Of a DNA stretch of 64,000 bases, positions 2,612 to 60,608 are shown piece after piece (within the stretch, counting starts at the first letter, position 1; every line of letters begins with the position of its first letter). The stretch covers positions 5,704,001-5,768,000 of the forward strand of contig NW_026889778.1 in NCBI RefSeq assembly GCF_033153115.1, given 5' to 3'. Both the position numbers and the translations under genes were made by a program. The notes below the pieces were generated by a model. That model did not search any database, had not been told where the DNA came from, and worked only from the letters and a program-made list of their open reading frames with translations. The stretch is from Saccostrea echinata. Lineage: Eukaryota.

Positions 2612-5600
2612 ATGTCGGATTTTTTCCAGTTTCTTAAAGATCACATCTATGTAAGACTTCATATATGATTATATGCTATCACTTGTATTTTGTTGTTGTT
2701 AAAGTACTAATCATGGGTTTAAAATGTCATATTTTAAGCAACTTTCCATTTGAAGTGATTGCCATATAGGCCTATATACTATATGATCATGAGTACATTT
2801 ATCTGTTTATATAGTGCATATATGAAATATTTACTCAGATGCCTTTATATTTATTCACTGATTCTGGTTGATCAGGATTTTGTAACTTATTACAAATACT
2901 CATCAAACTTAATTCATTTAACATTATATATCATTTTCTGTTTCAGATTGAAATTATATTTTAAGGTAGTATGGGATACCTCTACGTTATGACGTATTTC
3001 CGTTTGAAGTATTGTTTTGATTTGCATGAGTGCTTATTATCGGGTCAAAATTTGTAGATACACCGTTGAAAAGAACACTCTGAAGCCTATTTCAATGCAA
3101 GTTCTCACAAGTCGGCATTTTAAGTAAAAACAGACAAAAAAATCGCAAGTATATAAATTTACTTATAATTGTACAACGGACATTTAAAAAAGCAAACCCC
3201 TGTAAAAGGTAGTTTCAACATTGCTGCTTTTGAACACTTTTAAGCAAAAGCTGTATTTCAATTGTTTGAGTAACTGTACAGCACCTTGTGTGCGGTGAGG
3301 CATGGATAAGTGCGATTACTTCACATTGTGCTGAATTATCACCAATCAATTATCACGTTAACCAGAGCTGGACTTTTTTGTTATTTAATTCAAGAAGTAA
3401 CTGTTTGGTCACAAATCAGCTAGCTGTTGTATATAGTCCCAAAACGTTCAGATGAATGCAATTGCTCTGAACAAGACACGTCCTGGAAAGCGATTGTCCA
3501 TGCATTGTTTTCAAAACCGCTCAAAGTTGAAAACTACAAAGTGCGACTTTTTTATGGTTGGGAAAAAATGCTCATCATTTCTAGAATAGCACCCAGGTTT
3601 TTTCAACCCTTGGAAAATAAAGAAGGATAACTCTTCCGCTCGGATCTTTTAATTCAAAAAATTTTATATGCATTTTATATTTTCCATTTATATATATATT
3701 TTCAATTTGTTTATTTCACTTTGCTAACATATTAAGATACATTCTTATTGTAGACTTTCATGAAATGTTATCCGTCTGTTTTCAAGAAATAAAGTTTTCC
3801 CAGTTTTTTACGCTTATTTTTTGTTGAAAATTAAAAAAATACTAAGACATATTTCTTGTCATTTTTGTTTTTATAAACACTTTATATTAGCAAACGCCTG
3901 CCTATAATATTAAGCTTATGAAAAAAGAATTATGCAAGAAAAAAAATCGTTTTTGTATTTCTCATTAAAATAATAAAAAAATTATTAAAATTACACTTTA
4001 ATATACTGAAAGGTGGGGGTATTTCAAATCCTTCTAATTTGGGTACATAAATATGTAGGAGAAGTTTCGTTTGGTATCCCATACCACCTTAATTTGAAAG
4101 TTGTTTTTTTTTTTTTGAAAGATGTGCTTTTGAACTTTTTTCACTGTAGATCCCGATTCTGGTTGGATTATTTGTCCTGTCCCTGATACTCCTTCTGATC
4201 TGGTGGTGCTGTAGAAACAGGTAACAGAAATCCATACATAATGTCGCAAAAGCATAAGGTCTTTTTATAGGATCGCTATAATTATTCAAGCAATGTCAAA
4301 TAACAGTCTTCTTGACCTTTTTTGTTATGTTCATCAACAGTGTGCTTCATTGACATTTTTGTCCCCAGACACCATGGACACTTTCACTGAAAGTGGGTGA
4401 TATTAATTTGAAATATTTTATAACAACTCCCAGTGGCCTCGAAAAGACCCATATTGATTTTGAGGTCAATGGTTATGGTCAGAAATACATATTACATAAA
4501 TAATTTTTTGATGATAATTTTAGTTTTTCTGTTAGCTTTTGCAATAAACTTTAGGCCATGAATTTTTCTAACTTTAAAAAGACTCCTATTGACTTTAAGG
4601 CGAAAAGCTAGAAGGTCAAGGTTGACTTTTTTTTTCTCCTTCTCCATCTGCATATTTTTCCCAGTTCTTCCACCCTCTTCTTTTTTCCTTAAGCAGGGAA
4701 TACAAATTCTCTGAATTAGCTGGTTTGTTCTCTGATTAGGAATAGGTACTTATATCAGCCACTGAACACCCATGATGTGGCTCTGTATGACCGGATGTAC
4801 AACAACCAGAAACAAACAGAAGAAAAAGTTCAAGGTAACAGTCTAATAAATTAATAATCTGATTAACACTTGAAAATTATGCATATCCCATAACTGATCA
4901 TCCAAATAAGCTAAGATTTTTAGAAATAATTAATGCATAGTCATTTTGCAAGTTTTGTTGGAATTCTTTCAGTTTTGTTTCACTTTTACAAATGTAAGGA
5001 GACCAATAGGGGTTTTCATTGCAAAACATTTGTTCAGAATAGGGAAAGATTTAAAGCATATTTAAACTTTTAAAGTAATTTTTTCAACAAAATTTATTAA
5101 ATTTAACAAAATCAAGAAATCACAGGTAAAAAATCTTAATTACATATTTTTTAAAACTAATTATTTCTTAACAATTTTTCAAGTGATAGGTAGAAGGACA
5201 TTGTTATAGTGTGTTTGTGACATTAATATGATAATTAAAACTTCTTTAAGAGGTGGTCATAAAAAGTGTTATAAAAGAAAAGGCATAAGCTCTTTTAAAA
5301 GATCTTAAAACCCCAATCAGCTCCCTTAATTTATTTCCTGACTCGGCCTTTTTTCCATTTTTTTTTTCTGCAGACATTTATGTCTCTGACTCGGCCTTTT
5401 TTCCATTTTTGTTCTGTAGACACAGCCTGGATGAATGCTCAGTACTACCTACGATCTCATTCACAGTTCAACAAACTTGAACAGCTTAATCAACTAGGTA
5501 ACATCCTCTTGACTTTGAAAGTCAGTGTTTATTTTTGTTAGGAAATGTACTATTGTTTTATTTCTTTTAAACTTAAATCTGTATTGCCTAAGTTGTGTTT

Positions 5601-8600
5601 GAATTGTCCACCATTATCAAAGTTTGCATAAAATTTGAAAAAAGTGCCAAATATTGAATTTGCAGATTCAACTTCACTTTTCTTTGTTTGCATGATAATT
5701 CGTGAAAATTAGATTTTTCTGTATGACTGGCACTTCTTATTTACCTATCTGTGCTCTCTATTATTTGTGAAATAGAAAAGTGCATTTCAAAAATTTCTTT
5801 ATTAAAAACAGGAAGCAGATCTGAGAAACAATGGTTTCGTGTCAGCGATCAGAGAAGAAAGTCCGAGTGTGTCCTGAACACGCTTCCACGCCCGGATAAA
5901 TATCTTCTGGAATTTGACATAAAAACCAGAAAAGTGTTGAAAGAGCTGTTTAACCTTTTGAGGGTTAGTAATACATATATCTTCTGATCACTTCAGAAGA
6001 GGAAGATGATATTGAAAATCATGTTTTATTTACTAAAAGTTTATTTCTTAATAATTTTGAGAGATTGTCTTGACATGAAAATAAAATTCTACTGAATATT
6101 AACAGAGAACTTACTCATTACTGAACAGTTGGAAATAAATATACATGTATTGTGAATAAATAAATGCTACTGTCTTCTGAAAGTAAGGTTACTCAAAATA
6201 AAATGAACATGTCATAAGAGGGATGTATTTGTTAAAATCATATCTTATAAATAAATATAATGTTTAACTCTCATATTATGAAAACATTGTTCCTGTAGAT
6301 TAAATGTAATGATTTACAAAATGTACTCTTTCTACATTATGGGGGAGGGTAACTAGGGGTAAGAAAATAATCCTGTTATAAATGTATCTCTGGTTAGAAG
6401 CTGTCTTGTTTATACCTTTGTGTATTGCAGCATCCATACATATTTCCTATGATAGAGTTTGACTTTGTGATCGATCAGAATTTTGTGGTTATTATTCAGC
6501 CTGTTTGTAACAAAGGATCACTCAAGGATGTCATATATCAGGTAATGTCTTTAAAGTTTAATATCTAAAAACATCTTGAAGTTCTTAAATACAGTTGAGC
6601 TTTGATATCTGGAACTCCAATATCTCAAAGACCATGGATATGTTGAAGTGATTTGAAAGTCCCAACACTATTTCCTTATTGTATTTTAAAGTCAATATCT
6701 CAAATCTTCTGATATCTCAAAGTCAATATCTCAAATCTTCTGATATCTCAAAGTCAATATCTCAAATCTTCTTATATCTTAAAGTCAATATCTCAAATCT
6801 TCTGATGTCTCAAAGTTTTTTTCTTTGTCCCTTTGAGTTTGAGATAGCAAAGTTTGACTGTAATTTGAAGGGAAAGTCTTGTACAGCTAATTAAAATATT
6901 AGAACTATGAATTGTTTTATTTCCTGACAGAATCAAATGTCTTTTTTTTTTATAGAAAAAAATTTAATAAAAAAGGTTTTAAATGTTTCTTTATTCAGTG
7001 AGTGATTTAGGAAACACTTGAATAAACAGAGCTTTTCCTTCAGAACTCAACTTAGAGTGAGCTGTCTTTGTCAGCCTGTTAGGTGTCTGTGTAGTATATC
7101 TAGAGTACACTGTTCTATTATTTCTTTTTACAGAGTCGTTACTACACATCCTGGCATGATAAATACAAAGTACGAAGTCGCGGTCTAGGTATACAACAGG
7201 TAGCAGTGTACGGAAAACAAATTTTACAGGTAGATCCACTAATGGAAGGTTATATAACATTAACATCTTCATTATTCATCATAGTAAAGTACCGTATATA
7301 CTCGCCTATAAGTCGGATTTTTGGGAGTTAAACTTTGGTCCAAAACTCTATGTCCGACTTATAGGCGAGTTATGAAAAGATTGGTATCTTAGAAGGACAA
7401 TCCCTCTAAAATAAGCTTCAAAAATACAACCGACTTATAGGCGGACCAACTTATAGGCGAGTATATATGGTATTGAGTTCTATCTCCAGGGAAGCCCCCC
7501 TCTCTCTCTTCCTCTCTCTCTCTTTCTCTCTTTCTTTCAATCTCTCCCTCTCTCAATAGGTATTATTTATCAGTAATTTACCTTTATCCTAATACAGGGT
7601 CTATTATACATGGAAGAGAAGGAGTTACCTCCCCATGGGCATCTTCACAATGGAAACATTATGTTTGATAATGGGGTCTGCAGGTAGAATAACTCTAAAG
7701 ATATGTATGTCTTAATCAGAAAACATTTGATAATCAGCAGGTGGACTGCATAACTTCTATTTTCTCTGTATTTTGACAGAATAACAGGGTATGAGAACAG
7801 TTTCCTTGGTTTGAAGTCCAAACTTTCCATAATGGCAAGGAAGAAACTAAAGGAACAACCAGAGGCGATTGATGTCCTTTCCTTTGGTAATACTTAGTCT
7901 AAATTATGTAGACTATATCAAATAAAATACACATTCACTGTAAAATTAGTACATACATTTACAGGTTGATAAGGAATCCAATAATCTCAAACTATTTTCT
8001 TTTATTTAAATGTCCTTATTGTGTGTTACCTTTATAGTTCTCAAGGGGCAACTCAATTTTATGGTATGATATTTTGTATGATTTTACAGGTCATGTGTTT
8101 TACGAGATGTGTACAGGGTCAGAGCTTGACTCCGCCCACCCAGAGCCTCGACATCTCAGTGTCATCAACAACGCAGAAATTGTATCGGTAAGGTGTAACA
8201 TTTAGCTTGATTTATTTCTATGCCGCAGACAATCTGGCATCAATTCCAGGCAATTGACTGCCTGTATATCAAAACTCACACTTAACTTTTCACACAGTAA
8301 TAAAACTTTGCGAGATTTATTTCATGTTCAAACTTCAATATATTGATAAGGATTTGATTCAGCATTTTGTGTGGTGGATCAAAGGATGTTGATGTGTGTA
8401 GATTTGACCCTTTATGAAGAATTATTTATATATTTTGTTTAAAGATATTTGTCAGGTGTCCTCAATTTATAGTTGTGGGAATTTTTGTATATGTTAAGTT
8501 TCAATCCTTAAAGTAGAATGCTTTATCCACGTGTAGGCCTATAGGTCTCTCCATTAATTTTTTTCCATCTTAATAATGACGTCGACATTCACCCCAAGCT

Positions 8601-11600
8601 AGTGGCAGGCAGTAATTATTTACAGTAAACCATAGAAAATAAACCAAAACATAAAGTACCCAAGCTTATTGTGTGGAAAGTTGTTTTTCTTTTATTTATT
8701 TGTTTTTTTTCTTTCTTTTGGCTATGAAGTATAAGATATGGAATCTTTCTTGTGTCAGACATTAAAATAACTTAACAGTTATTTATTGATAATTCATCAT
8801 CCAAATATAAAAATTAAGAAAAACTCATAATATATCTATATTATACTTCTTATGATTAGTTGTAATTACAAGCCTAGAAAGATATCATTTATATTTTAAA
8901 TCTTTTAATTCTATAATTTATTATTTTGTTTAATAATTAATATTCTTTGAACTCTTAACAAATGTTTAAAAAAAACTTTTCATGAATAGGAATTGATCTA
9001 AGAAAACATTTTTTAAAAATGATTTAAACTCTTATTTAATACATATACTATGTTCTAAAAATTTCATTTTTTTTCAATTTATTAAGTAAATGTTCTGCTA
9101 TCAAATCTTTATTATTAATTGTTGATCAAATTCTCACTTTGAAAATTCAACACATTGAAATAATTATCTATATTTTATCAATAATTACCATCATTGGTCA
9201 GCATCTCACTTTTAGAGGTGGTCTGTTACCTATTATTGGTCAATTATTATAAATCATCATGATCTTTTTTCTTTGATCTGTTATCTTTTGTGTATTAATT
9301 ATGACCCATCACAGACTAGCTTATCACTTTGATCCTAACAGCACAAGGACACCTCACCAAGCATCCCCTTAATGACCCAAGCTAATTGACCTGCTTAATA
9401 AAAGGGAGGTGTTAAGACTCTAAATAAACCAATCAGTAATCAGTTTTGGATTCATTAACCAATCATAGAAAAGGATATATACTTTCAGCCAATGAAAATT
9501 TAATTAAGCAGTCCAAGCTGATTTCTAGCAGAATTTGGGGGTACAAATAAGCCTGCAGAATTCAGTGTTGACAATTCACCATTGTGATCCAATCTAAGCT
9601 ATCATAGTGCTAATAAGTGAGATTGCAATCTGATAAATTTAATCAATTGTGCTTTGTGCATCAGTTGAATTAATCCCAGTGTGGTATTATCCTCAGCTTG
9701 TTGTGTGTTATATAGTGAAAAAGTTAATGTTTTAGTATTGTTTTGTGAAGTGTTTCAGTGTTGTGTAGTGCTTCAGTGTTGTGTAGTGTTTCAGTGTTGT
9801 GTAGTGCTTCATTGTTGTGTAGTGCTTCAGTGTTGTGCAGTGCATTCAGTGTGTCATCATGGCTGCTCGTGCATCTTCCCCAGTCATCGAGATCAACTTC
9901 GCCACCACCCTAGAAGACGTCATCAAGGCCACCATCTTTGACGATGCCCCGCCTTCACCGCAGCCTTCCAGCACCTCCATCCAGACCACCCTCAACACCA
10001 GTGCAGCTGAGACCAGATTTGATGAGTGCCTGAATTCCCTCATCAGTGATCATCCCACACCAGAGAAATCCGCAGACAACGACCTCCAGCTAGCTCTACA
10101 GTGTCTCCATCCTTCAGCACCAGAGAAGATCTGTGACGACAACACCATCTCCTCTACGGAAATCTTCAGTGCCCTCCAGACCATCTTCCGCTATGAAGCC
10201 AAGTCATCCACACCATCAGTGCTCATCAAGTCTGTTCAACCAGAGCTGTCTACTTCCCAACGTGAACAACAGCTTCTTCAGAGATTCAACGTCCTTCATC
10301 ACCATCACCCTCAGCAGATCAACGACTTGTCATCATTCTTCAAGTACCAGAGTGCCCAAGTGGAGACAGACCGCTACTGTGCCCTTCATCAGAACTCCAA
10401 CCAGCCACATCACATCAGAGAAAGCATCAACCAACACTACAACATCACCCACCATCGCATCATGGACCGTGTGGAGAACAGCCTACAGATCCTGGAGGAG
10501 AATCTACCCCAGCCATCACCCATCAACACCAAAACTACCACCACACAGACCAACAGCCAGATCAACAACCTCCGCACCAGACCGTCGCTATCCCAGAAGT
10601 CTGTTCAGCTGATGGAGAAGTGGTTCTACAGTCATCTAGAGCATCCCTACCCATCGTCCGACATCATCGAGGAGCTGGCCAGGAGAGGAGGGATCAAGGA
10701 GGAGCAGGTCAAGAAGTGGTTCTCCAACAAGAGGAACAGGAGCCGGAGGTCATCAGGGGTCAACAAGAGGAAGGTGTCCAGTGTCAACAAGAGTGTGCCA
10801 TGCTTCTGGTGATTGTGTTGTAGAAGATTGGTTGTGTCAAAAATAGTGGGTGTAATTCTGATGATTGTGTTCTAGAAGATTGGTTGTGTCTAAAACGGTG
10901 GGTCTCCATTCTGGTGATTGTGTTTGTGCATCAGTGAAATTCTCCAAGGGAAAAAGGTGAAGAAGTGGTGGTGAGTATTTAGTGCTCAGTGTTGTGTGAA
11001 GTTCTGTATATAATTGATATGTAGTGCTTTATATAGATTTAGTGCTGTGAACTATAAGTGCTATCATGTTTATTTTAATATTGTTTGAGTTTCATTTATA
11101 CAGTGCTTCTAATTTTATTTATGAATGTTTGAATGTTGTAGAATATATGAATAAATAAAAGATCTAATGAAAAGAGGGTTTTTGTCTTCTTTGTCATGAT
11201 TAAGAAAGGAAAGAATACACTGTATACATAATATTTTGGTGGTGTATTCTATTTAGCACTTTTGGCAGAAAGCAGCTTCTGCTAAATCAAGTACATTGCT
11301 CATAGTCTTGTATACTATATTATATATCATACTAATAAGATTAGTCATATAAAAGAAGTATCCTCAAATACTTCATCTAGTGGAATTACCTGATAACCCT
11401 TAGAATGGACTAGCCAAAGGGTATGTAAGGCAAAGCTATGGGAAAGTAAGGCATTCAGAATCTAACCAAAGAAGTTGAGTGATGAATCAGCAATAAAGAT
11501 CAATAAAATTGAATCCATAACATATGTGTAGGGGATTGAATACACGTATATTTAGACATAATTCCCATTTATTAGTATTAGTATATAAGGATGGGATGTT

Positions 11601-20600: not shown

Positions 20601-23525
20601 AAAAGAAAAAAGGTGAAGAAAGGAAAGGTGCAATTAGTGCTTAGTGAGGATCCAGTGCTCAGTGTTGTGTGAATTTAAGTTGTGTATATAAGTTGATATA
20701 TAGTGCTTTATATAGATTGGTGGCTTTGATTGAAATACATGTATAAGTGCTATGATGTTTATTTTTACTTTATTTCTCTGTTTCTCTGATATAGTGCTTC
20801 TAATTTATTTATTAATGTTTGATTGTTTTTAAGTATTTGAATAAAAAAAATAATTTATGAAAAAAAAGGTTTTTGTCGTCTTTGTTTTGTCATAATTGAG
20901 TAAGGAAGGATACACTGTATACATATCATATTTGGCGGTGTACTCTATTTAGCACTTTTGGCAGAAAGCAGCTTCCCCTAAATAAAGTACAGGACTAAAT
21001 GTCTTTTATGAGTGTATATATATTTACATCCACTGAATATCATCAGCTCCTTTATTTCTTATGAAAACCATTGCTGGTAATCTGTCAGTACCGGTAAATG
21101 CTGTTTAGCAAATCACTTACAGAGATTTCTGAAGCAGCGGCTATTCCATCTGCATCAATGAAACATACAAGCTCATGCATATCAATAATAAAATATTCAA
21201 CCAAGTTTTTTATACAGATAATATACCAATCGTTGGTTGTTAGTATGGGAATTAATGCATTTTATTGTTTAAATTCATATTTAAATTAGCATGTCCAGAA
21301 GGAGCTGATCAAATCTTCACTAACTTGTTGGAAATCAATTTCCGCTAAGTATACAGTATTAAAAGGAATTACCTGTATCTTTTGTTAACCAATAAATTGA
21401 GCCAGCCCTTGAGATGAGTACCTATATATATGTTTTCTTTGATGATCTTATGAAAGCAAATATTTTTATATTTCAGGTGCTGAATTTTATCTTTGGAGTG
21501 GACACAGGGGGCAGATACCCTTCATTGAAAATGGTAATCCGACTAAGGCAACATTTTATGCACATTATATTCTATTGCTTTTGTCCAATGTTTTGTAGAG
21601 CATTTTTAAAATAATATATTTCATTAAATAGTATTCAAAAATGAATTAGATGATAGAAAAAAAGATATATGACATTTAAAGGGAGAATGTTAAAAATTGA
21701 TTAAATAAAAAATTGTCAGACTCTTTTTGCACTTAATTGATTTATTCAGGGTTATTATGAAAAATTAAAATGTTTTGTGTATCAATTATAACCAATCACA
21801 CACGAGTTCTCTGACTTTGATCTGTTATGTTTTGTGTATTAATTATAACCAATCACACACAAGCTCTATCACTTTGATCTTTTATGTTTTGTGTAGATAT
21901 TGGAGCTGAGCTTCTTCAAAGCAGTGAAGTTAATGGAGATAGATAAATTTAATCCTGCAAAGGTTTGTATATCTTATTTTTTTCAAAATTCTGATGTATT
22001 CATTTAATTAAGTTAAATTCAAAGTTCAAAGATTTTAGAATGTACGTGTTAATAAATACTTTAACTATTTTAATTAGCAGTAAGTCAAGGTATTGAAAAA
22101 AAAAATACTACAGACTGAGTTTTAAGGTTTCATTTTGTGAACATCTTCCACCTTATACAGTGTATTTTTGTAGATTCATTTATCTAAAGAAATGAAGAAA
22201 GCAATCAAAGCTGTCAGCTCTGGAAAGAAGATGTGAGTAACCTGATATAGAAATCACTGTACCTTTTTGTCTATCCATCAAAGCTTTTTTATATTATAAT
22301 GCAGCTATAATTATCTTGAGATGTTTAGAAGATGATACCCTCTAAATGTTGAGCTTTCTCAATCAAATGCACATACAGTAAAACATGGTTATAGCAAACA
22401 TGCTTATAATGAATTTTAGTGTAGTGATTTTCATTCCTTGTAGTTTTTAAACCTGTTGTGAACTGAATGGATATGAACTGAATGGTGAACTGAATGGATA
22501 TAATGGATATGTACATTTATAATGAAGCAAACTCGTTGGTCCCTGTCACTTTGCTATAAGCATGTTTTACTCTCTAGTTAAACTTCAAGACTGCTGAGAG
22601 AAAAAAAAAAGATATTAAGAAATAAAAACAAGCATTCTGAGAGTATTGCATTAGCAATACTAGTCCCCTACCGGTAAGTGTAATCTGGTTCCCATCAAAA
22701 TTTAAAATGTTGTAATTCCGTCAAAAAAATCATTGAAGCGGAACGTAGCATAAACTTAATTTGTAACTCATCAAGATACACTTACATACCAAAAATCAGC
22801 TCAATATCCGCAAGCGTTTAGACAAAAAGTGTGGAAAACCCTTGAAAATTAAAGGGCCGTAATTCCCTCAAAAATCAATGAAGCGGAACGAAATTCAAAC
22901 TTGATCTGTAACTTATCAATATACACTCACATACCAAAAATCAGCTCAATATCTGTAAGCGTTTAGAAAAAAAGTGCGGAAAACCAAGTGGGACAGACTG
23001 ACAGACAGACGGACAGACAGACGGACGGACAGACTCCGAGGAAACCTATAGTCCCCTCCGGTTTCACCGGTAGGGGACTAATAATGGATATTTGCAAGAT
23101 TTTTTGCTTTGTGAATATATGAACATGCTTTTTTTTTAACTTGTTCATGCAAATCTTTTTGTGACAATGCTGTAATATTATCCCTTTCAATTCACAGAAA
23201 GAAATTGAAGAGGACAACCTCCTCAGTCAGAATGGAGAGAACAGATTCCAAAACCATGCTTCACAGTGGAGGATCTAGACCTCCCTCACCCCCTCCCCCT
23301 GGTGGCCCCCCTGTGGGGGTCCCTCCACCACCACCCCCACCTCCTCCACCCACCAGCCCTGGAGGACCACCACCACCTCCCCCTCCTCAAGCCCCGGTAC
23401 CTCCACCACCACCCCCAGCATCATCAGGAGGGTCAGCTGGGAGGGCTGCCTTGCTCGGTGATATAAGGTCGGGGACTAAGCTAAAGAAAACTGTAACTAA
23501 TGACAGAAGTGCCCCGAAGTTGTGA
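2612..23525 (+). CDS. Slowpoke-binding protein / PXK-like pseudokinase with N-terminal TM helix, polyproline tract and WH2 domain (14 coding exons)
   Basis: In-frame GT-AG exons: 2612-2650, 4150-4220, 4740-4834, 5420-5497, 5812-5963, 6431-6541, 7134-7229, 7598-7683, 7780-7886, 8090-8187, 21477-21533, 21897-21962, 22174-22232, 23198-23525. Motifs HPYIFP, KGSLKDVIY, YGKQILQGLLYM, HGHLHNGNI, IDVLSFGHVFYEMCTG and C-terminal GRAALLGDIRSGTKLKKTVTNDRSAPKL (WH2) are typical of PXK/Slob. Confidence 0.88.
2965..4088. mobile_element. Non-autonomous TTAA-TSD DNA transposon (Kolobok-like)
   Basis: TTAA|GGTAGTATGGGATACC ... GGTATCCCATACCACC|TTAA. Confidence 0.75.
6592..6860. mobile_element. Tc1/mariner-pogo type MITE with internal ~31-bp tandem repeat
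   Basis: TA|CAGTTGAGC...GTTTGACTG|TA; internal repeats of TCTCAAAGTCAATATCTCAAATCTTCTGA. Confidence 0.65.
7292..7470. mobile_element. pogo/mariner-type MITE
   Basis: TA|CCGTATATACTCGCCTATAAGT ... ACTTATAGGCGAGTATATATGG|TA. Confidence 0.75.
9180..9600 (+). promoter_or_regulatory. Promoter of homeobox copy 1 (TCF/LEF-type sites, CCAAT x3, TATA-like element)
   Basis: CTTTGATC at 9271 and 9327; CCAAT at 9429, 9459, 9489; TACAAATA at 9542. The block is highly conserved in copy 2. Confidence 0.65.
9859..10812 (+). CDS. Intronless TALE-class homeobox protein (spiralian TALE/SPILE-like), copy 1, nested in pseudokinase intron 10
   Basis: 317-aa ORF from ATG 9859. Homeodomain RTRPSLSQKSVQLMEKWFYSHLEHPYPSSDIIEELARRGGIKEEQVKKWFSNKRNRSRR has the TALE PYP loop and WFxNxR. 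AATAAA at ~11151. Confidence 0.92.
   Translation: MAARASSPVIEINFATTLEDVIKATIFDDAPPSPQPSSTSIQTTLNTSAAETRFDECLNSLISDHPTPEKSADNDLQLALQCLHPSAPEKICDDNTISSTEIFSALQTIFRYEAKSSTPSVLIKSVQPELSTSQREQQLLQRFNVLHHHHPQQINDLSSFFKYQSAQVETDRYCALHQNSNQPHHIRESINQHYNITHHRIMDRVENSLQILEENLPQPSPINTKTTTTQTNSQINNLRTRPSLSQKSVQLMEKWFYSHLEHPYPSSDIIEELARRGGIKEEQVKKWFSNKRNRSRRSSGVNKRKVSSVNKSVPCFW
12436..13833. mobile_element. Non-autonomous element with ~140-bp terminal hairpin (Helitron-like), hosting an RTE fragment
   Basis: Imperfect palindrome 12440-12580 (TACAATATTCACCT...AGGTGAATATTGTA); absent from duplication unit 1. Confidence 0.5.
13048..13615 (-). mobile_element. 5'-truncated RTE-clade LINE (3' end of RT ORF, frameshifted)
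   Basis: ORFs ...NSNVKSILLYGTETW... and WGWIGHTLRKP...ALTWNPQGKRKRGRPRNTWRR; (TAAG)n tail at 13048-13060. Confidence 0.85.
13927..15320 (+). mobile_element. Helentron-associated element (HINE) carrying ~7 copies of a ~167-bp satellite (Cg170-like)
   Basis: 5' TTAGGTCACCTGAGT, 3' ACTCGGGTGACCT plus short hairpin. Unit landmark GAATTTCATGGCC recurs at ~14229, 14398, 14565, 14732, 14897, 15052, 15220. Confidence 0.8.
16507..16810 (+). mobile_element. tRNA-derived SINE inserted in the LINE RT
   Basis: A/B box head, (CAAT)n tail, 14-bp TSD TCGACAYGGTATGG (16493-16506 / 16811-16824). Second copy at 47103. Confidence 0.88.
17711..17916. mobile_element. TA-flanked MITE inside the LINE
   Basis: TA|CTGCAAATGTAC ... 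GTACGTTCACAG|TA. Confidence 0.55.
18968..19400 (+). promoter_or_regulatory. Promoter of homeobox copy 2
   Basis: CTTTGATC at 19068 and 19124; CCAAT at 19226, 19256, 19286; TACAAATA at ~19339. Confidence 0.65.
19620..20570 (+). CDS. Intronless TALE-class homeobox protein (SPILE-like), copy 2, nested in the same intron
   Basis: 316-aa ORF, near-identical paralogue of 9859-10812, with HPYP and WFSNKR intact. AATAAA at ~20840. Confidence 0.92.
   Translation: MASCASSPVIEINFATTLEDVIKATIFDDAPPSPQPSSTSVQTTLNTSAAEARFDECLDSLISDHPTPEKSADNDLQLALQCLHPSTPEKICDDNTISSTEIFSALQTIFRYEAKSSTPSVLIKSVQPEMSTSQREQQLLQRFNNLHHHHPQQINDLSSFFKYQSAQVETDRYCALHQNSNQPHHIRESINQHYNITHHRIMDRVENSLQILEENLPQPSPINTTTTTTQPDSQISNFRTRPSLSQKSVQLMEKWFYSHREHPYPSSDVIEELARKGGIKEEQVKKWFSNKRNRSRRSSGVNKRKVSSVNKSVPCF
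20915..21357. mobile_element. MITE downstream of homeobox copy 2 (truncated remnant at 11219-11290 after copy 1)
   Basis: CTGTATAC...GGCGG / CCGC...GTATACAG termini; the same left end is present in unit 1. Confidence 0.5.
22628..23081. mobile_element. HINE-type element with (GACA/GACG)n microsatellite
   Basis: TAGTCCCCTACCGGT subterminal repeat, terminal hairpin TAGTCCCCTCCGGTTTCACCGGTAGGGGACTA, internal tandem duplication. Confidence 0.7.
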
Positions 23526-31782: not shown

Positions 31783-32934
31783 ATGACTGGAATAAAGATC
31801 TCACAGAACCTAGGGCTTATATGCTCATTTTTATGGTTCCTACCTCTTGTAGCAGCTTTCCAAACTGGTAATTATTGACCAAATTTAACATGAGTGTAAA
31901 GTATTTAACAGTAACTAAATTGTGTGTGTGAAGGGGGGGGGGGGGATACTGATAATGGTTATAGATTTTTTTTTTCATCTTTAATCCCTTGCACTAGGCT
32001 AAATTTTTGACATTGCTCTTAATAGTATACAATAAGGACAGATGATAAAAACCAACTTTTATCAAAAATCTTGAAAATAACAACTAAAGACTAAAGTCAT
32101 GTTTATATATGTTAAATGAATAAGTTTAACCGCATATATGTTTTTATTTTTCATTCAAAGTTTCACAATAATGTGATTTAAAGTGACAAAAAATTGTATA
32201 GATTAATATTAAGTATGGTCACAGAAAGGTGGGATTTTGAACATCATAGTAAGTTAAGAATTTCTTAATATTTTAAAAAATTATCATCTGCATCATTTAC
32301 AACCAAAAAGGTCCAAAAGTATATACCAATCCAAGTATCCATTTATTTGTCTGTATCATCTGTCCTTAAACCTATTAAATGTATTGAGAGATAAGATTCA
32401 TTGAGAGTTTGATCTCGTACATTTCAGAAACTGAGTTTGATCTCATACATTTCAGACCCCAGGGATTGGCCTACCTTGACAGCAGTGTCAGTAGTGGTGT
32501 CTGCTGTAATTATCTTGGTGCTTATTGTCGTTCTTATCCAGTGTGGAGGTTGCGTAGGAATGGAAGTGTCTTCCGAATCTCATCCCGCTGCCGGCACCAA
32601 CAAAGGACAGCACTACCCCTCCTCAGTCGTCACAGACGCAAACACCCAAGTTCTAATGTCTTCCCATACTCTCCCAGGAGATGACCCGTATCAACCAAAT
32701 AATGGGGGACAAGGCTTGCCATATTCACTTAACCCCACTGTTCCCAGTGCCCCAGGATTTACTGGTTATCAAAGCACACCTACTGCACAGCCTGCCCCAG
32801 GATGGGGACAAGGAGGGGGGCCAGGACAGGGTTATCAGTCCCCTGGCCCTGGAGCACACCGCCCAGCAATGGGAAGTGAACCCCCTCCCCCATCATACAA
32901 TGACAGTGTCCGGGGTAGTGATGCTTTGTGGTGA
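31783..32934 (+). CDS. Small type-I membrane protein: signal peptide, very short ectodomain, TM helix, Pro/Gly/Gln-rich tail with PPxY motif
   Basis: Exon 31783-31867 (MTGIKISQNLGLICSFLWFLPLVAAFQT, phase 1) joins exon 32456-32934 (DPRDWPTLTAVSVVVSAVIILVLIVVLIQCGGC...PPPPSYNDSVRGSDALW*). Confidence 0.75.
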
Positions 32935-60448: not shown

Positions 60449-60608
60449 NNNNNNNNNNNNNNNNNNNNNNNNNNNNNNNNNNNNNNNNNNNNNNNNNNNN
60501 NNNNNNNNNNNNNNNNNNNNNNNNNNNNNNNNNNNNNNNNNNNNNNNNNNNNNNNNNNNNNNNNNNNNNNNNNNNNNNNNNNNNNNNNNNNNNNNNNNNN
60601 NNNNNNNN
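60449..60608. other. Assembly gap (160 N)
   Basis: N run, preceded by an inverted repeat at 60285-60448. Confidence 0.99.

What the first reader, a model, noticed from the sequence alone, without database searches (positions are those of the whole stretch)
8188..21476. Two intronless TALE (SPILE-like) homeobox genes nested same-strand inside one intron of a Slob/PXK-like pseudokinase
Seen: host exon 10 ends at 8187 and exon 11 resumes in frame at 21477. Between them lie two complete single-exon ORFs (9859-10812, 19620-20570), each with its own promoter block and AATAAA. The homeodomain has the TALE PYP loop and an unusual Ser50 (WFSNKR; PBC has G50, MEIS/PKNOX/TGIF I50, IRX A50). A conserved-looking helical block lies upstream (QINDLSSFFKYQSAQVETDR...HYNITHHRIMDRVENSLQILE). 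Known: spiralians have lineage-specific TALE expansions (SPILE; oyster novel TALE clades, some with a PADRE domain) that act in early cleavage. Inference: a tandemly amplified early-embryo transcription factor cassette housed inside an unrelated signalling gene; annotation pipelines could easily miss or fuse it.
Basis: partly seen in the sequence, partly recalled or inferred. Interest (0 to 1): 0.9.

Follow-up and report, generated by a model that had tools for sequence, protein, structure and literature searches.

The report
Oyster TALE homeobox pair inside slob gene
Two working copies of a mollusc-specific early-embryo homeobox gene, already described in the Pacific oyster, sit inside one intron of an unrelated pseudokinase gene. 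The same arrangement in other oysters explains several odd "kinase-homeobox" gene models in public databases.

Summary
The window is Saccostrea echinata. Two intact single-exon ORFs (9859-10812 and 19620-20570, + strand; 95% identical proteins, dN/dS 0.19) lie inside the 13,289-bp intron 10 (8188-21476) of the slob2/PXK-like pseudokinase gene. That gene's exons match RefSeq XP_061187370.1 at 100%.

The ORFs are not a new family. They are orthologues of Pacific-oyster CgTALE11/12/13, classed as TALE Clade VI (Paps 2015), TALE-VI (Barton-Owen 2018) and SPILE A/C clade (Phuangphong 2021). The PADRE domain, the QVKK motif, Ser50, tandem copies and egg-to-blastula expression are all published.

I found no published mention of the nesting, and it is conserved:
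- The M. gigas model CGI_10021478 (CgTALE12, listed with a "PKc_like" domain) joins slob exons 1-10 to the TALE ORF.
- Two C. virginica RefSeq "PXK-like" models of 605 aa make the same join at the same junction.
- S. cucullata carries both genes on one 371-kb contig, with consecutive accessions.

The fused models cut a conserved N-terminal motif and use a weak acceptor, so they are probably artefacts. Neither window ORF is in the 15-billion-protein collection.

Verdict: a new member of a known kind, of modest interest.

The parts
2612..8187 (+). Host slob2/PXK-like gene, coding exons 1-10. Approximate exons (+/-2 nt): 2612-2650, 4150-4220, 4740-4834, 5419-5498, 5812-5964, 6431-6541, 7132-7229, 7596-7684, 7780-7887, 8090-8187.
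   Evidence: Exact exon-by-exon matches to P0054 (XP_061187370.1) residues 1-312. Also matches the N-terminal part of C. virginica P0044.
8188..21476 (+). Host intron 10 (13,289 bp, GT...AG). It is by far the largest intron of the gene and holds both TALE genes plus repeats.
   Evidence: Orthologous mRNA-like proteins P0052 and P0053 carry the exon10-exon11 junction.
9009..11327 (+). Duplicated unit 1 (promoter, 5'UTR, ORF, 3'UTR).
   Evidence: blastn against 18808-21023: 89% over 1.8 kb, then 77%. Regional identities.
9251..9560 (+). Conserved upstream (promoter) block of copy 1, with two CTTTGAT motifs and three CCAAT boxes.
   Evidence: 95.2% identical to copy 2 with no gaps, against 79-87% in the flanks. 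Partly retained upstream of the C8 paralogue. Sequence read.
9743..9852 (+). 18-nt tandem repeat, 6.1 copies, just upstream of the ATG (presumed 5'UTR). Copy 2 has 3.5 copies at 19550-19613.
9859..10812 (+). TALE-VI / SPILE A/C gene copy 1, single-exon ORF of 317 aa.
10240..10512 (+). PADRE domain coding region of copy 1 (residues 128-218).
   Evidence: Conserved block in the bivalve alignment. Three long helices with pLDDT about 90. A PADRE-only profile finds 133 clusters, and sampled hits carry a C-terminal TALE homeodomain.
10573..10752 (+). TALE homeobox of copy 1 (residues 239-298; PYP loop, Ser50, QVKK motif).
   Evidence: Pfam. Best structural match is Exd, 4cyc_B: Z 10.2, rmsd 0.8 A, 43% identity.
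11150..11159 (+). First + strand AATAAA after the stop of copy 1 (two overlapping copies).
   Evidence: Aligns with 20840 of copy 2.
11400..18800 (.). Spacer made of dispersed repeats: reverse-transcriptase-related fragments at 13181-13639 (-) and 16885-17634 (+), and a 168-bp satellite at 14213-14996.
   Evidence: Pfam DUF6451 and a weak RVT_1 hit. Thousands of first-look matches in the same genome. TRF.
18808..21023 (+). Duplicated unit 2. Its promoter block lies at about 19048-19357.
19620..20570 (+). TALE-VI / SPILE A/C gene copy 2, single-exon ORF of 316 aa (homeobox at 20334-20513).
20840..20845 (+). First + strand AATAAA after the stop of copy 2.
21477..23525 (+). Host exons 11-14 (21477-21533, 21897-21962, 22174-22232, about 23199-23525). 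The last encodes a proline-rich region and a WH2 motif.
   Evidence: Exact matches to P0054 residues 312-480. WH2 Pfam hit at 5e-13.

Best explanation
These are two tandem, functional, intronless paralogues of a mollusc-specific TALE homeobox gene. The gene belongs to TALE Clade VI / TALE-VI / SPILE A/C clade, and the copies are orthologues of Magallana gigas CgTALE11/12/13. Each protein has a disordered N-terminal half, a three-helix PADRE domain and a PBC-like TALE homeodomain. Both genes lie on the same strand inside intron 10 of the S. echinata slob2/PXK-like pseudokinase gene.

Shown here: the coordinates, the orthology, purifying selection on both copies, a co-duplicated and conserved upstream block, and conservation of the host-guest arrangement in Saccostrea, Magallana and Crassostrea.

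Inferred: each copy is transcribed from its own promoter as an unspliced mRNA of about 1.6 kb in the egg-to-cleavage embryo, where it acts as a sequence-specific transcription factor in blastomere specification, as published for its relatives. The host pre-mRNA reads through both genes and splices 8187 to 21477. The 'kinase-homeobox' gene models in M. gigas and C. virginica are annotation chimeras produced by this nesting.
For: ORFs and domains:
- The ORFs are intact and carry TALE homeodomains.
- Between the two copies dN/dS is 0.185 with dS 0.126. Against the third paralogue on contig C8 it is 0.21-0.22 with dS about 0.6.

Orthology:
- The proteins are 73% identical over their full length to P0004 (K1RAG1), whose sequence is CgTALE13.
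- CgTALE11-13 are TALE Clade VI with the QVKK motif and PADRE. They are TALE-VI in Barton-Owen and SPILE A/C in Phuangphong.

Host gene:
- All 14 host exons match XP_061187370.1 exactly.
- Transcript-sized orthologues P0052 and P0053 carry the exon 10-11 junction.

Conserved nesting:
- CgTALE12 (CGI_10021478), P0044 and P0045 all read slob exons 1-10 and then the TALE ORF from ATIFDD onward.
- Paps Supplementary Table 1 lists 'PKc_like superfamily' for TALE12.
- S. cucullata slob2 XP_062618833 and TALE XP_062618834 lie on the same 370,766-bp contig.

Own promoter:
- The 310-bp upstream block is 95.2% identical between copies, against 79-87% in the flanks.
- The block is shared with the unlinked C8 paralogue.

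Expression in relatives:
- Oyster TALE7-14 are expressed from egg to blastula.
- Mussel A/C-clade genes are expressed in specific blastomeres at the 4- to 16-cell stages.

Fused models look artefactual:
- The junction removes the TTLEDIIK motif, which is conserved across bivalves.
- The internal acceptor has a pyrimidine fraction of 0.53 with two upstream AGs, at the weak end of the host's own acceptors.
Against:
- Transcription start, poly(A) site, timing of expression and absence of chimeric splicing are therefore all inferred.
- Nesting in M. gigas and C. virginica is deduced from fused protein models, not from their DNA.
- In Ostrea edulis the TALE pair and the PXK-like protein are recorded on contigs of different length (93.5 and 88.7 Mb). 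The arrangement may therefore not hold in all oysters.
Confidence: 0.8

Rival explanations
1. The TALE ORFs also serve, or serve instead, as alternative 3' terminal exons of the host. Splicing from 8187 to the in-frame AG at 9927/9928 (or 19688/19689) would give a real membrane-anchored pseudokinase-PADRE-homeodomain fusion protein conserved among oysters.
For: Two independent pipelines in two species produced the same junction...VVS|ATIFDD in GLEAN model CGI_10021478, and ...LVS|ATIFDD in Gnomon models XP_022299812 and XP_022302805. Exon 10 ends in phase 0, and AAG|GCC is present in both window copies.
Against: - The junction cuts off 23 N-terminal residues, including the TTLEDIIK motif conserved from oysters to mussels and scallops.
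- The acceptor is weak: pyrimidine fraction 0.53 with two AGs in the tract.
- A later C. virginica annotation has a stand-alone 317-aa protein (XP_078340059).
- The AG is fixed by coding constraint (Lys codon), so its conservation says nothing about splicing.
- Each ORF has its own conserved upstream block.
Confidence: 0.12
2. One or both copies are recent non-functional duplicates, either pseudogenes in the making or never expressed.
For: Neither exact ORF is in the 15-billion-protein collection, which includes RNA assemblies. There are no RNA data for this species.
Against: - Both frames are intact.
- dN/dS between the copies is 0.185, with 24 synonymous and 17 non-synonymous changes.
- The promoter block is conserved at 95%.
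- Tandem pairs of the same gene are kept in O. edulis and M. gigas.
Confidence: 0.05
3. The copies are processed retrogenes that landed in the intron.
For: They are intronless and have an AATAAA about 300 nt after the stop.
Against: - The duplicated unit includes about 850 bp upstream of the ATG, with the conserved promoter block. The unlinked C8 paralogue shares that block, which indicates DNA-level duplication.
- Other PADRE/TALE paralogues in this genome also show long open frames, so lack of introns is a family trait.
- No poly(A) tail remnant follows the 3' end.
Confidence: 0.03

Closest known systems
Magallana (Crassostrea) gigas CgTALE11, CgTALE12, CgTALE13 (CGI_10021477, CGI_10021478, CGI_10015317); TALE Clade VI of Paps et al. 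2015 (PMC5322547), TALE-VI of Barton-Owen et al. 2018 (PMC6118893)
   Same: Full-length orthology: 73% identity to CgTALE13 (= K1RAG1). Same length, N-terminal TTLEDIIK motif, PADRE, QVKK and WFSNKR motifs, and C-terminal SVPCFW. CgTALE11/12 are adjacent gene models. The CgTALE12 model carries the slob/PXK-like N-terminus, which implies the same host gene.
   Different: This is a different genus. The two S. echinata copies are each other's closest relatives (support 99/95), so duplication or homogenisation is lineage-specific. I found no published mention of the nesting in the library searched. The S. echinata copies are not in the protein collection as stand-alone proteins.
SPILE genes, A/C clade (limpet NfSPILE-A and -C; mussel MvSPILE-6 to -13; Phuangphong et al. 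2021, PMC8524836)
   Same: Spiralian-specific TALE homeodomain with a PADRE domain upstream. Lineage-specific tandem duplication is described for limpet, chiton and abalone members. Expression is at cleavage stages.
   Different: Only 33-40% identical outside oysters. Blastomere-specific expression is shown for mussel and limpet, not for these genes. Position 50 is Ala or Gly in most non-oyster members.
PBC class TALE proteins (Pbx / Extradenticle)
   Same: Closest canonical homeodomain by sequence (42-47% identity) and by structure (Exd: Z 10.2, rmsd 0.8 A). Some database names for the orthologues say 'Pbx-like'.
   Different: No PBC-A/B domain: Pfam PF03792 is absent and hhalign of PADRE against PBC gives probability below 1%. 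Position 50 is Ser rather than Gly.
Slob (Drosophila Slowpoke-binding protein) / vertebrate PXK, the host gene
   Same: Kinase-like domain and C-terminal proline-rich region with WH2 motif. The catalytic motifs are degenerate: HGHLHNGN replaces HRDxxxxN.
   Different: No PX domain hit is recorded for the molluscan proteins, whereas the vertebrate PXK hits carry PF00787. The N-terminus has a hydrophobic, transmembrane-like stretch instead (read by eye from the sequences; no TM predictor was run).

Membership tests
TALE-class homeobox genes | Three-residue insertion between helices 1 and 2 (P-Y-P) and a match to the KN-type homeodomain profile | tested here: met
   HPYPS loop present. PF05920 scores 51 bits against a cut-off of 24 in both copies. 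Structural match to Exd, Meis2 and TGIF1 homeodomains.
TALE Clade VI / TALE-VI (Paps 2015; Barton-Owen 2018) | Groups with Cgi_TALE9 and 11-13; QVKK motif in helix 3 | tested here: met
   73% full-length identity to CgTALE13 (P0004). The oyster clade has 100/100 support. EEQVKKWF is present.
TALE Clade VI / SPILE A/C clade | PADRE domain of about 87-90 aa upstream of the homeodomain | tested here: met
   Residues 128-218 align with the conserved block of oyster, mussel, pearl-oyster and scallop homologues, with 14 invariant columns in that span. Predicted as three long helices at pLDDT about 90. A PADRE-only profile retrieves CgTALE13 at 6e-36 and 133 clusters in all. Eight of ten sampled hits have a C-terminal Homeobox_KN domain.
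SPILE genes (functional definition) | Zygotic or maternal expression at cleavage stages with a role in blastomere specification | not testable with these tools
The only support is published data for orthologues and relatives.
PBC class (Pbx/Exd) | PBC-A/B domain N-terminal to the homeodomain; Gly50 | tested here: not met
   No PF03792 hit. hhalign of PADRE or the whole pre-homeodomain region against a PBC alignment gives probability 0.4-0.6%. Position 50 is Ser.
Nested (intronic, same-strand) gene pair | Guest gene lies entirely within one host intron, and the host is spliced across it | tested here: met
   Host exons 10 and 11 flank both ORFs and match the RefSeq protein exactly. Splicing across the intron is supported by orthologous transcript-sized proteins. 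It was not confirmed with reads from this species.
Nested gene pair | Guest has its own promoter and poly(A) site and is transcribed independently | tested here: inconclusive
   A conserved upstream block and a positionally conserved AATAAA are present. No transcript data are available.
Slob/PXK-like pseudokinase (host) | Kinase-like domain lacking catalytic residues, plus a WH2 motif; a PX domain in PXK proper | tested here: met
   PF07714, PF00069 and PF02205 are recorded for P0054. WH2 hit at 5e-13 in the last exon. The HRD motif is degenerate. No PX domain hit is recorded for the molluscan proteins, so this is Slob-type rather than PXK proper.

The most novel reading that the evidence does not exclude
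The in-frame junction from slob exon 10 into the TALE ORF is used in vivo. Oysters would then make, beside the stand-alone factor, a conserved chimeric protein that links a transmembrane-anchored pseudokinase fragment to a PADRE-homeodomain module. That would amount to a membrane-tethered homeodomain factor, or a regulated switch between host and guest output. Separately, the nesting may be kept across oysters because the slob intron supplies regulatory context for early embryonic activation.
Probability: 0.1. Interest if true: 0.65.

Novelty: new member of a known kind. Interest (0 to 1): 0.32.

Why it matters
- It corrects the record for a gene family used in spiralian evo-devo. The 'PKc_like' domain listed for CgTALE12 is a by-product of nesting, not a companion domain. 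The 605-aa C. virginica 'PXK-like' proteins have the same origin, and the fused CgTALE12 sequence has been used in published alignments.
- It adds two apparently unannotated SPILE-type genes to the S. echinata gene set.
- It shows that a host-guest arrangement has been kept across at least three oyster genera while the guest keeps duplicating or homogenising within each lineage.
- It gives a concrete locus for asking how an early-embryo gene is switched on inside a gene used elsewhere.
- It does not reveal a new kind of gene or mechanism.

Tried and rejected
I could not fetch the DNA of the M. gigas, C. virginica, S. cucullata or O. edulis loci, so synteny rests on protein models, contig lengths and accession order.
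- The third homologous-protein search (P0044 residues 311-605) returned nothing. It should at least have found mussel homologues, so it is uninformative, and I could not list fused models in other species.
- hhalign of PADRE against the PBC domain gave probability below 1%, so PADRE shows no detectable relation to PBC.
- A fold search for PADRE gave only generic antiparallel helical bundles such as F-BAR, I-BAR and designed coiled coils. Z was 8-9, below the stated noise level for helical proteins.
- Complex prediction on a PADRE homodimer gave no verdict (score 0.00). This is no evidence either way.
- I tried to locate the scan's other note, a TALE gene in a TBC1D31 intron, by searching the genome for RabGAP-TBC. 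No hit lay near any TALE locus.
- I looked for slob-like exons within 30 kb either side of the C8 paralogue and found none. That copy is not nested in a slob paralogue.
- I considered and rejected an assembly artefact or haplotig. The units are 11% diverged, lie 9.8 kb apart and are separated by different repeats.
All host comparisons were made exon by exon against P0054.
Full report
**Observation**

9859-10812 and 19620-20570 (+ strand) each open at the first ATG after an in-frame stop. They encode 317 and 316 aa that are 95% identical without gaps. Both score above Pfam's gathering threshold for Homeobox_KN and Homeodomain. The TALE P-Y-P loop and WFSNKR (Ser at homeodomain position 50) are present.

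The host exon boundaries are also right. Exon 10 is 8090-8187 and is followed by GTAAGG. CAG at 21474-21476 precedes exon 11 (21477-21533), and the join is in phase 0.

**Identity of the genome and host**

Every coding exon I could find in 2612-23525 matches, residue for residue, the RefSeq protein XP_061187370.1 (P0054). That protein is annotated as 'probable inactive serine/threonine-protein kinase slob2' of Saccostrea echinata. I made these comparisons exon by exon and did not build a joined coding sequence.

The window is contig C29:5,704,001-5,768,000 of a 923-Mb assembly.

The host protein has these features:
- a hydrophobic, transmembrane-like N-terminal stretch (read by eye from the sequence; no TM predictor was run)
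- a kinase-like domain with a degenerate catalytic loop
- a proline-rich tail with a WH2 motif

Its relatives are named Slowpoke-binding protein or PXK-like. No PX domain hit is recorded for the molluscan proteins, whereas vertebrate PXK has one.

Intron 10 (13,289 bp) is far larger than the other introns. Transcript-sized orthologues from Magallana (P0052, P0053) carry the exon 10-exon 11 junction.

**What the guests are**

The nearest proteins are annotated oyster proteins:

| Species | Identity |
|---|---|
| S. cucullata | 88% |
| S. echinata, contig C8 paralogue | 76% |
| M. gigas K1RAG1 | 73% |
| O. edulis | 72% |
| C. virginica | 72% |
| Mussel, pearl-oyster, scallop and Dreissena proteins | 31-43% |

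Canonical Pbx/Exd matches only over the homeodomain.

K1RAG1 (P0004) has the sequence given as CgTALE13 in the supplement of Phuangphong et al. 2021. CgTALE11-13 have been classified three ways:
- TALE Clade VI in Paps et al. 2015, defined partly by the QVKK motif and the ~87-aa PADRE domain
- TALE-VI in Barton-Owen et al. 2018
- SPILE A/C clade in Phuangphong et al. 2021

The window proteins have QVKK. Their residues 128-218 align with the conserved pre-homeodomain block of all bivalve homologues.

An AlphaFold model built on that alignment shows three long helices at residues 132-214 (pLDDT about 90). The homeodomain at 246-298 has pLDDT 85-91, and everything else is disordered.

The homeodomain is closest to Extradenticle: Z 10.2, rmsd 0.8 A, 43% identity. 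PADRE matches only generic helical bundles below the noise level and shows no profile similarity to the PBC domain.

A PADRE-only profile built from six paralogues of this genome finds just 133 clusters among 1.84 billion representatives. Eight of ten sampled hits, including the weakest, carry a TALE homeodomain C-terminal to the match. PADRE is thus a genuine, narrowly distributed partner of this homeodomain.

Ser50 is shared by all oyster and scallop members. It is visible in the published CgTALE11-13 sequences, so it is a clade trait and not an oddity of this locus.

**Are both copies functional?**

- Between the two copies there are 24 synonymous and 17 non-synonymous differences (dS 0.126, dN/dS 0.185).
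- Against the C8 paralogue, dS is about 0.6 and dN/dS 0.21-0.22.
- Both frames are intact.

The duplicated unit runs from about 850 bp upstream of the ATG to about 500 bp past the stop. Identity between the two units varies by region:

| Region (copy 1 coordinates) | Identity between copies |
|---|---|
| Distal upstream | 87% |
| Block 9251-9560 | 95.2%, no gaps |
| ORF | 95.7% |
| 5' leader | 84% |
| 3' region | 83% |
| Beyond the AATAAA | 79% |

The conserved block holds two CTTTGAT motifs and three CCAAT boxes. It is partly retained upstream of the unlinked C8 paralogue. Together these point to DNA-level duplication of a complete transcription unit with a constrained, or homogenised, promoter.

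The first + strand AATAAA after each stop lies at homologous positions, 11150 and 20840. The motif itself is common in this AT-rich DNA.

The spacer between the units consists of dispersed repeats and a 168-bp satellite.

**Conservation of the nesting, the part I could not find published**

*Crassostrea virginica.* The 90%-identity cluster of the C. virginica orthologue contains two 605-aa RefSeq proteins named 'PX domain-containing protein kinase-like protein' (XP_022299812 and XP_022302805). Their first ~312 residues are the slob/PXK-like exons 1-10. The rest is the TALE protein from ATIFDD onward.

*Magallana gigas.* The gene model CGI_10021478 (CgTALE12) is built the same way, with the same junction. 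Paps et al.'s Supplementary Table 1 lists 'PKc_like superfamily' for it. Its neighbour CGI_10021477 is CgTALE11, a stand-alone ORF.

*Saccostrea cucullata.* The slob2 protein and the TALE orthologue have consecutive RefSeq accessions and sit on the same 370,766-bp contig.

Together with the S. echinata DNA in hand, the simplest reading is that a TALE-VI gene, often a pair, has lived in this slob intron since before Saccostrea, Magallana and Crassostrea diverged.

*Ostrea edulis* may differ. Its near-identical pair (LOC130047056 and LOC130047057) is recorded on a 93.5-Mb sequence, and its PXK-like protein on an 88.7-Mb one.

None of the papers I read mentions nesting, introns or a kinase in this context.

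In the tree, the two window copies are sisters (99/95) to the exclusion of the S. cucullata orthologue, and the O. edulis pair is likewise species-specific. The cause is either recurrent duplication or concerted evolution. I cannot separate the two.

**Are the fusions real?**

Probably not, but this is untested.

Against real fusions:
- The junction removes 23 N-terminal residues, including the TTLEDIIK motif conserved from oysters to mussels and scallops.
- The internal acceptor has a pyrimidine fraction of 0.53 with two AGs in its tract, at the poor end of the host's own acceptors.
- Its AG is simply the end of a conserved Lys codon.
- A later C. virginica annotation gives a stand-alone 317-aa protein.

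For real fusions:
- Two independent pipelines chose the identical junction.

I give a real chimeric isoform about 10-12%.

**Annotation status**

Neither window ORF occurs as an exact sequence in the 15-billion-protein collection. That collection does hold the host protein and the C8 paralogue of the same species. No 95-100% hit of 174-555 aa appeared either. The two genes are therefore either unannotated in S. echinata or hidden in a longer fused model that I could not see.

**What could not be done**

Expression, transcript ends and splice usage in this species therefore rest on orthologues:
- Oyster TALE7-14 are expressed from egg to blastula.
- Mussel A/C-clade SPILE genes are expressed in specific blastomeres at the 4- to 16-cell stages.

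One protein search was blank and uninformative. The PADRE homodimer prediction gave no verdict.

**Verdict**

The new points are the conserved host-guest arrangement, the explanation of the chimeric 'kinase-homeobox' models, and two probably unannotated genes. This is a new member of a known kind, with interest about 0.3.

Noticed in passing
window 21770-21895: A 57-nt tandem repeat (2.2 copies, 91% matches) in host intron 11 ends right at the acceptor of exon 12 (21897). It contains a 65-nt stretch that is 91% identical to part of the TALE promoter block (9271-9334), including the CTTTGAT motif. The scan also noted this as s1-810159.
   Followed up: partly
window 9743-9852 vs 19550-19613; 10804-10924: Copy-number differences in short tandem repeats inside the presumed UTRs. 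An 18-nt unit has 6.1 copies in copy 1 and 3.5 in copy 2, just upstream of the ATG. A 52-nt unit (2.3 copies) straddles the stop codon in copy 1 only. The C8 paralogue also repeats the 52-nt unit.
   Followed up: partly
G000:C8:3987846-3988787 (L003): A third close paralogue (78% aa identity; RefSeq XP_061171782.1) on another contig. It is intronless and shares the promoter block, but no slob-like exons lie within 30 kb on either side. Its S. cucullata counterpart is named 'pre-B-cell leukemia transcription factor 2-like'.
   Followed up: partly
G000 loci L004-L012 (C1:9.94 Mb pair, C56, C54, C30, C9, C29:4.29 Mb, C2:27.74 Mb): Further TALE paralogues in the same genome, at least three of them with PADRE. 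Nearly all sit in long uninterrupted frames of 306-646 aa, so lack of introns looks like a family trait. The C2 locus shows two homeodomain matches about 100 bp apart, as described for SPILE B-clade genes.
   Followed up: no
window 14213-14996: A 168-bp satellite, 4.7 copies at 80% matches, inside the spacer between the two TALE units. Related units continue to about 15239.
   Followed up: no
window 32413-32931 (+): An open frame of 173 aa with a hydrophobic segment and a Pro/Gly/Gln-rich tail, downstream of the host gene. It has no Pfam hit.
   Followed up: no
protein P0171 (676 aa): One hit of the PADRE profile shows eight separate matched stretches and only fragmentary Pfam hits. It may be a repetitive or mis-predicted PADRE-containing protein.
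   Followed up: no
window 60449-60608: A run of 160 N (assembly gap or masked).
   Followed up: no
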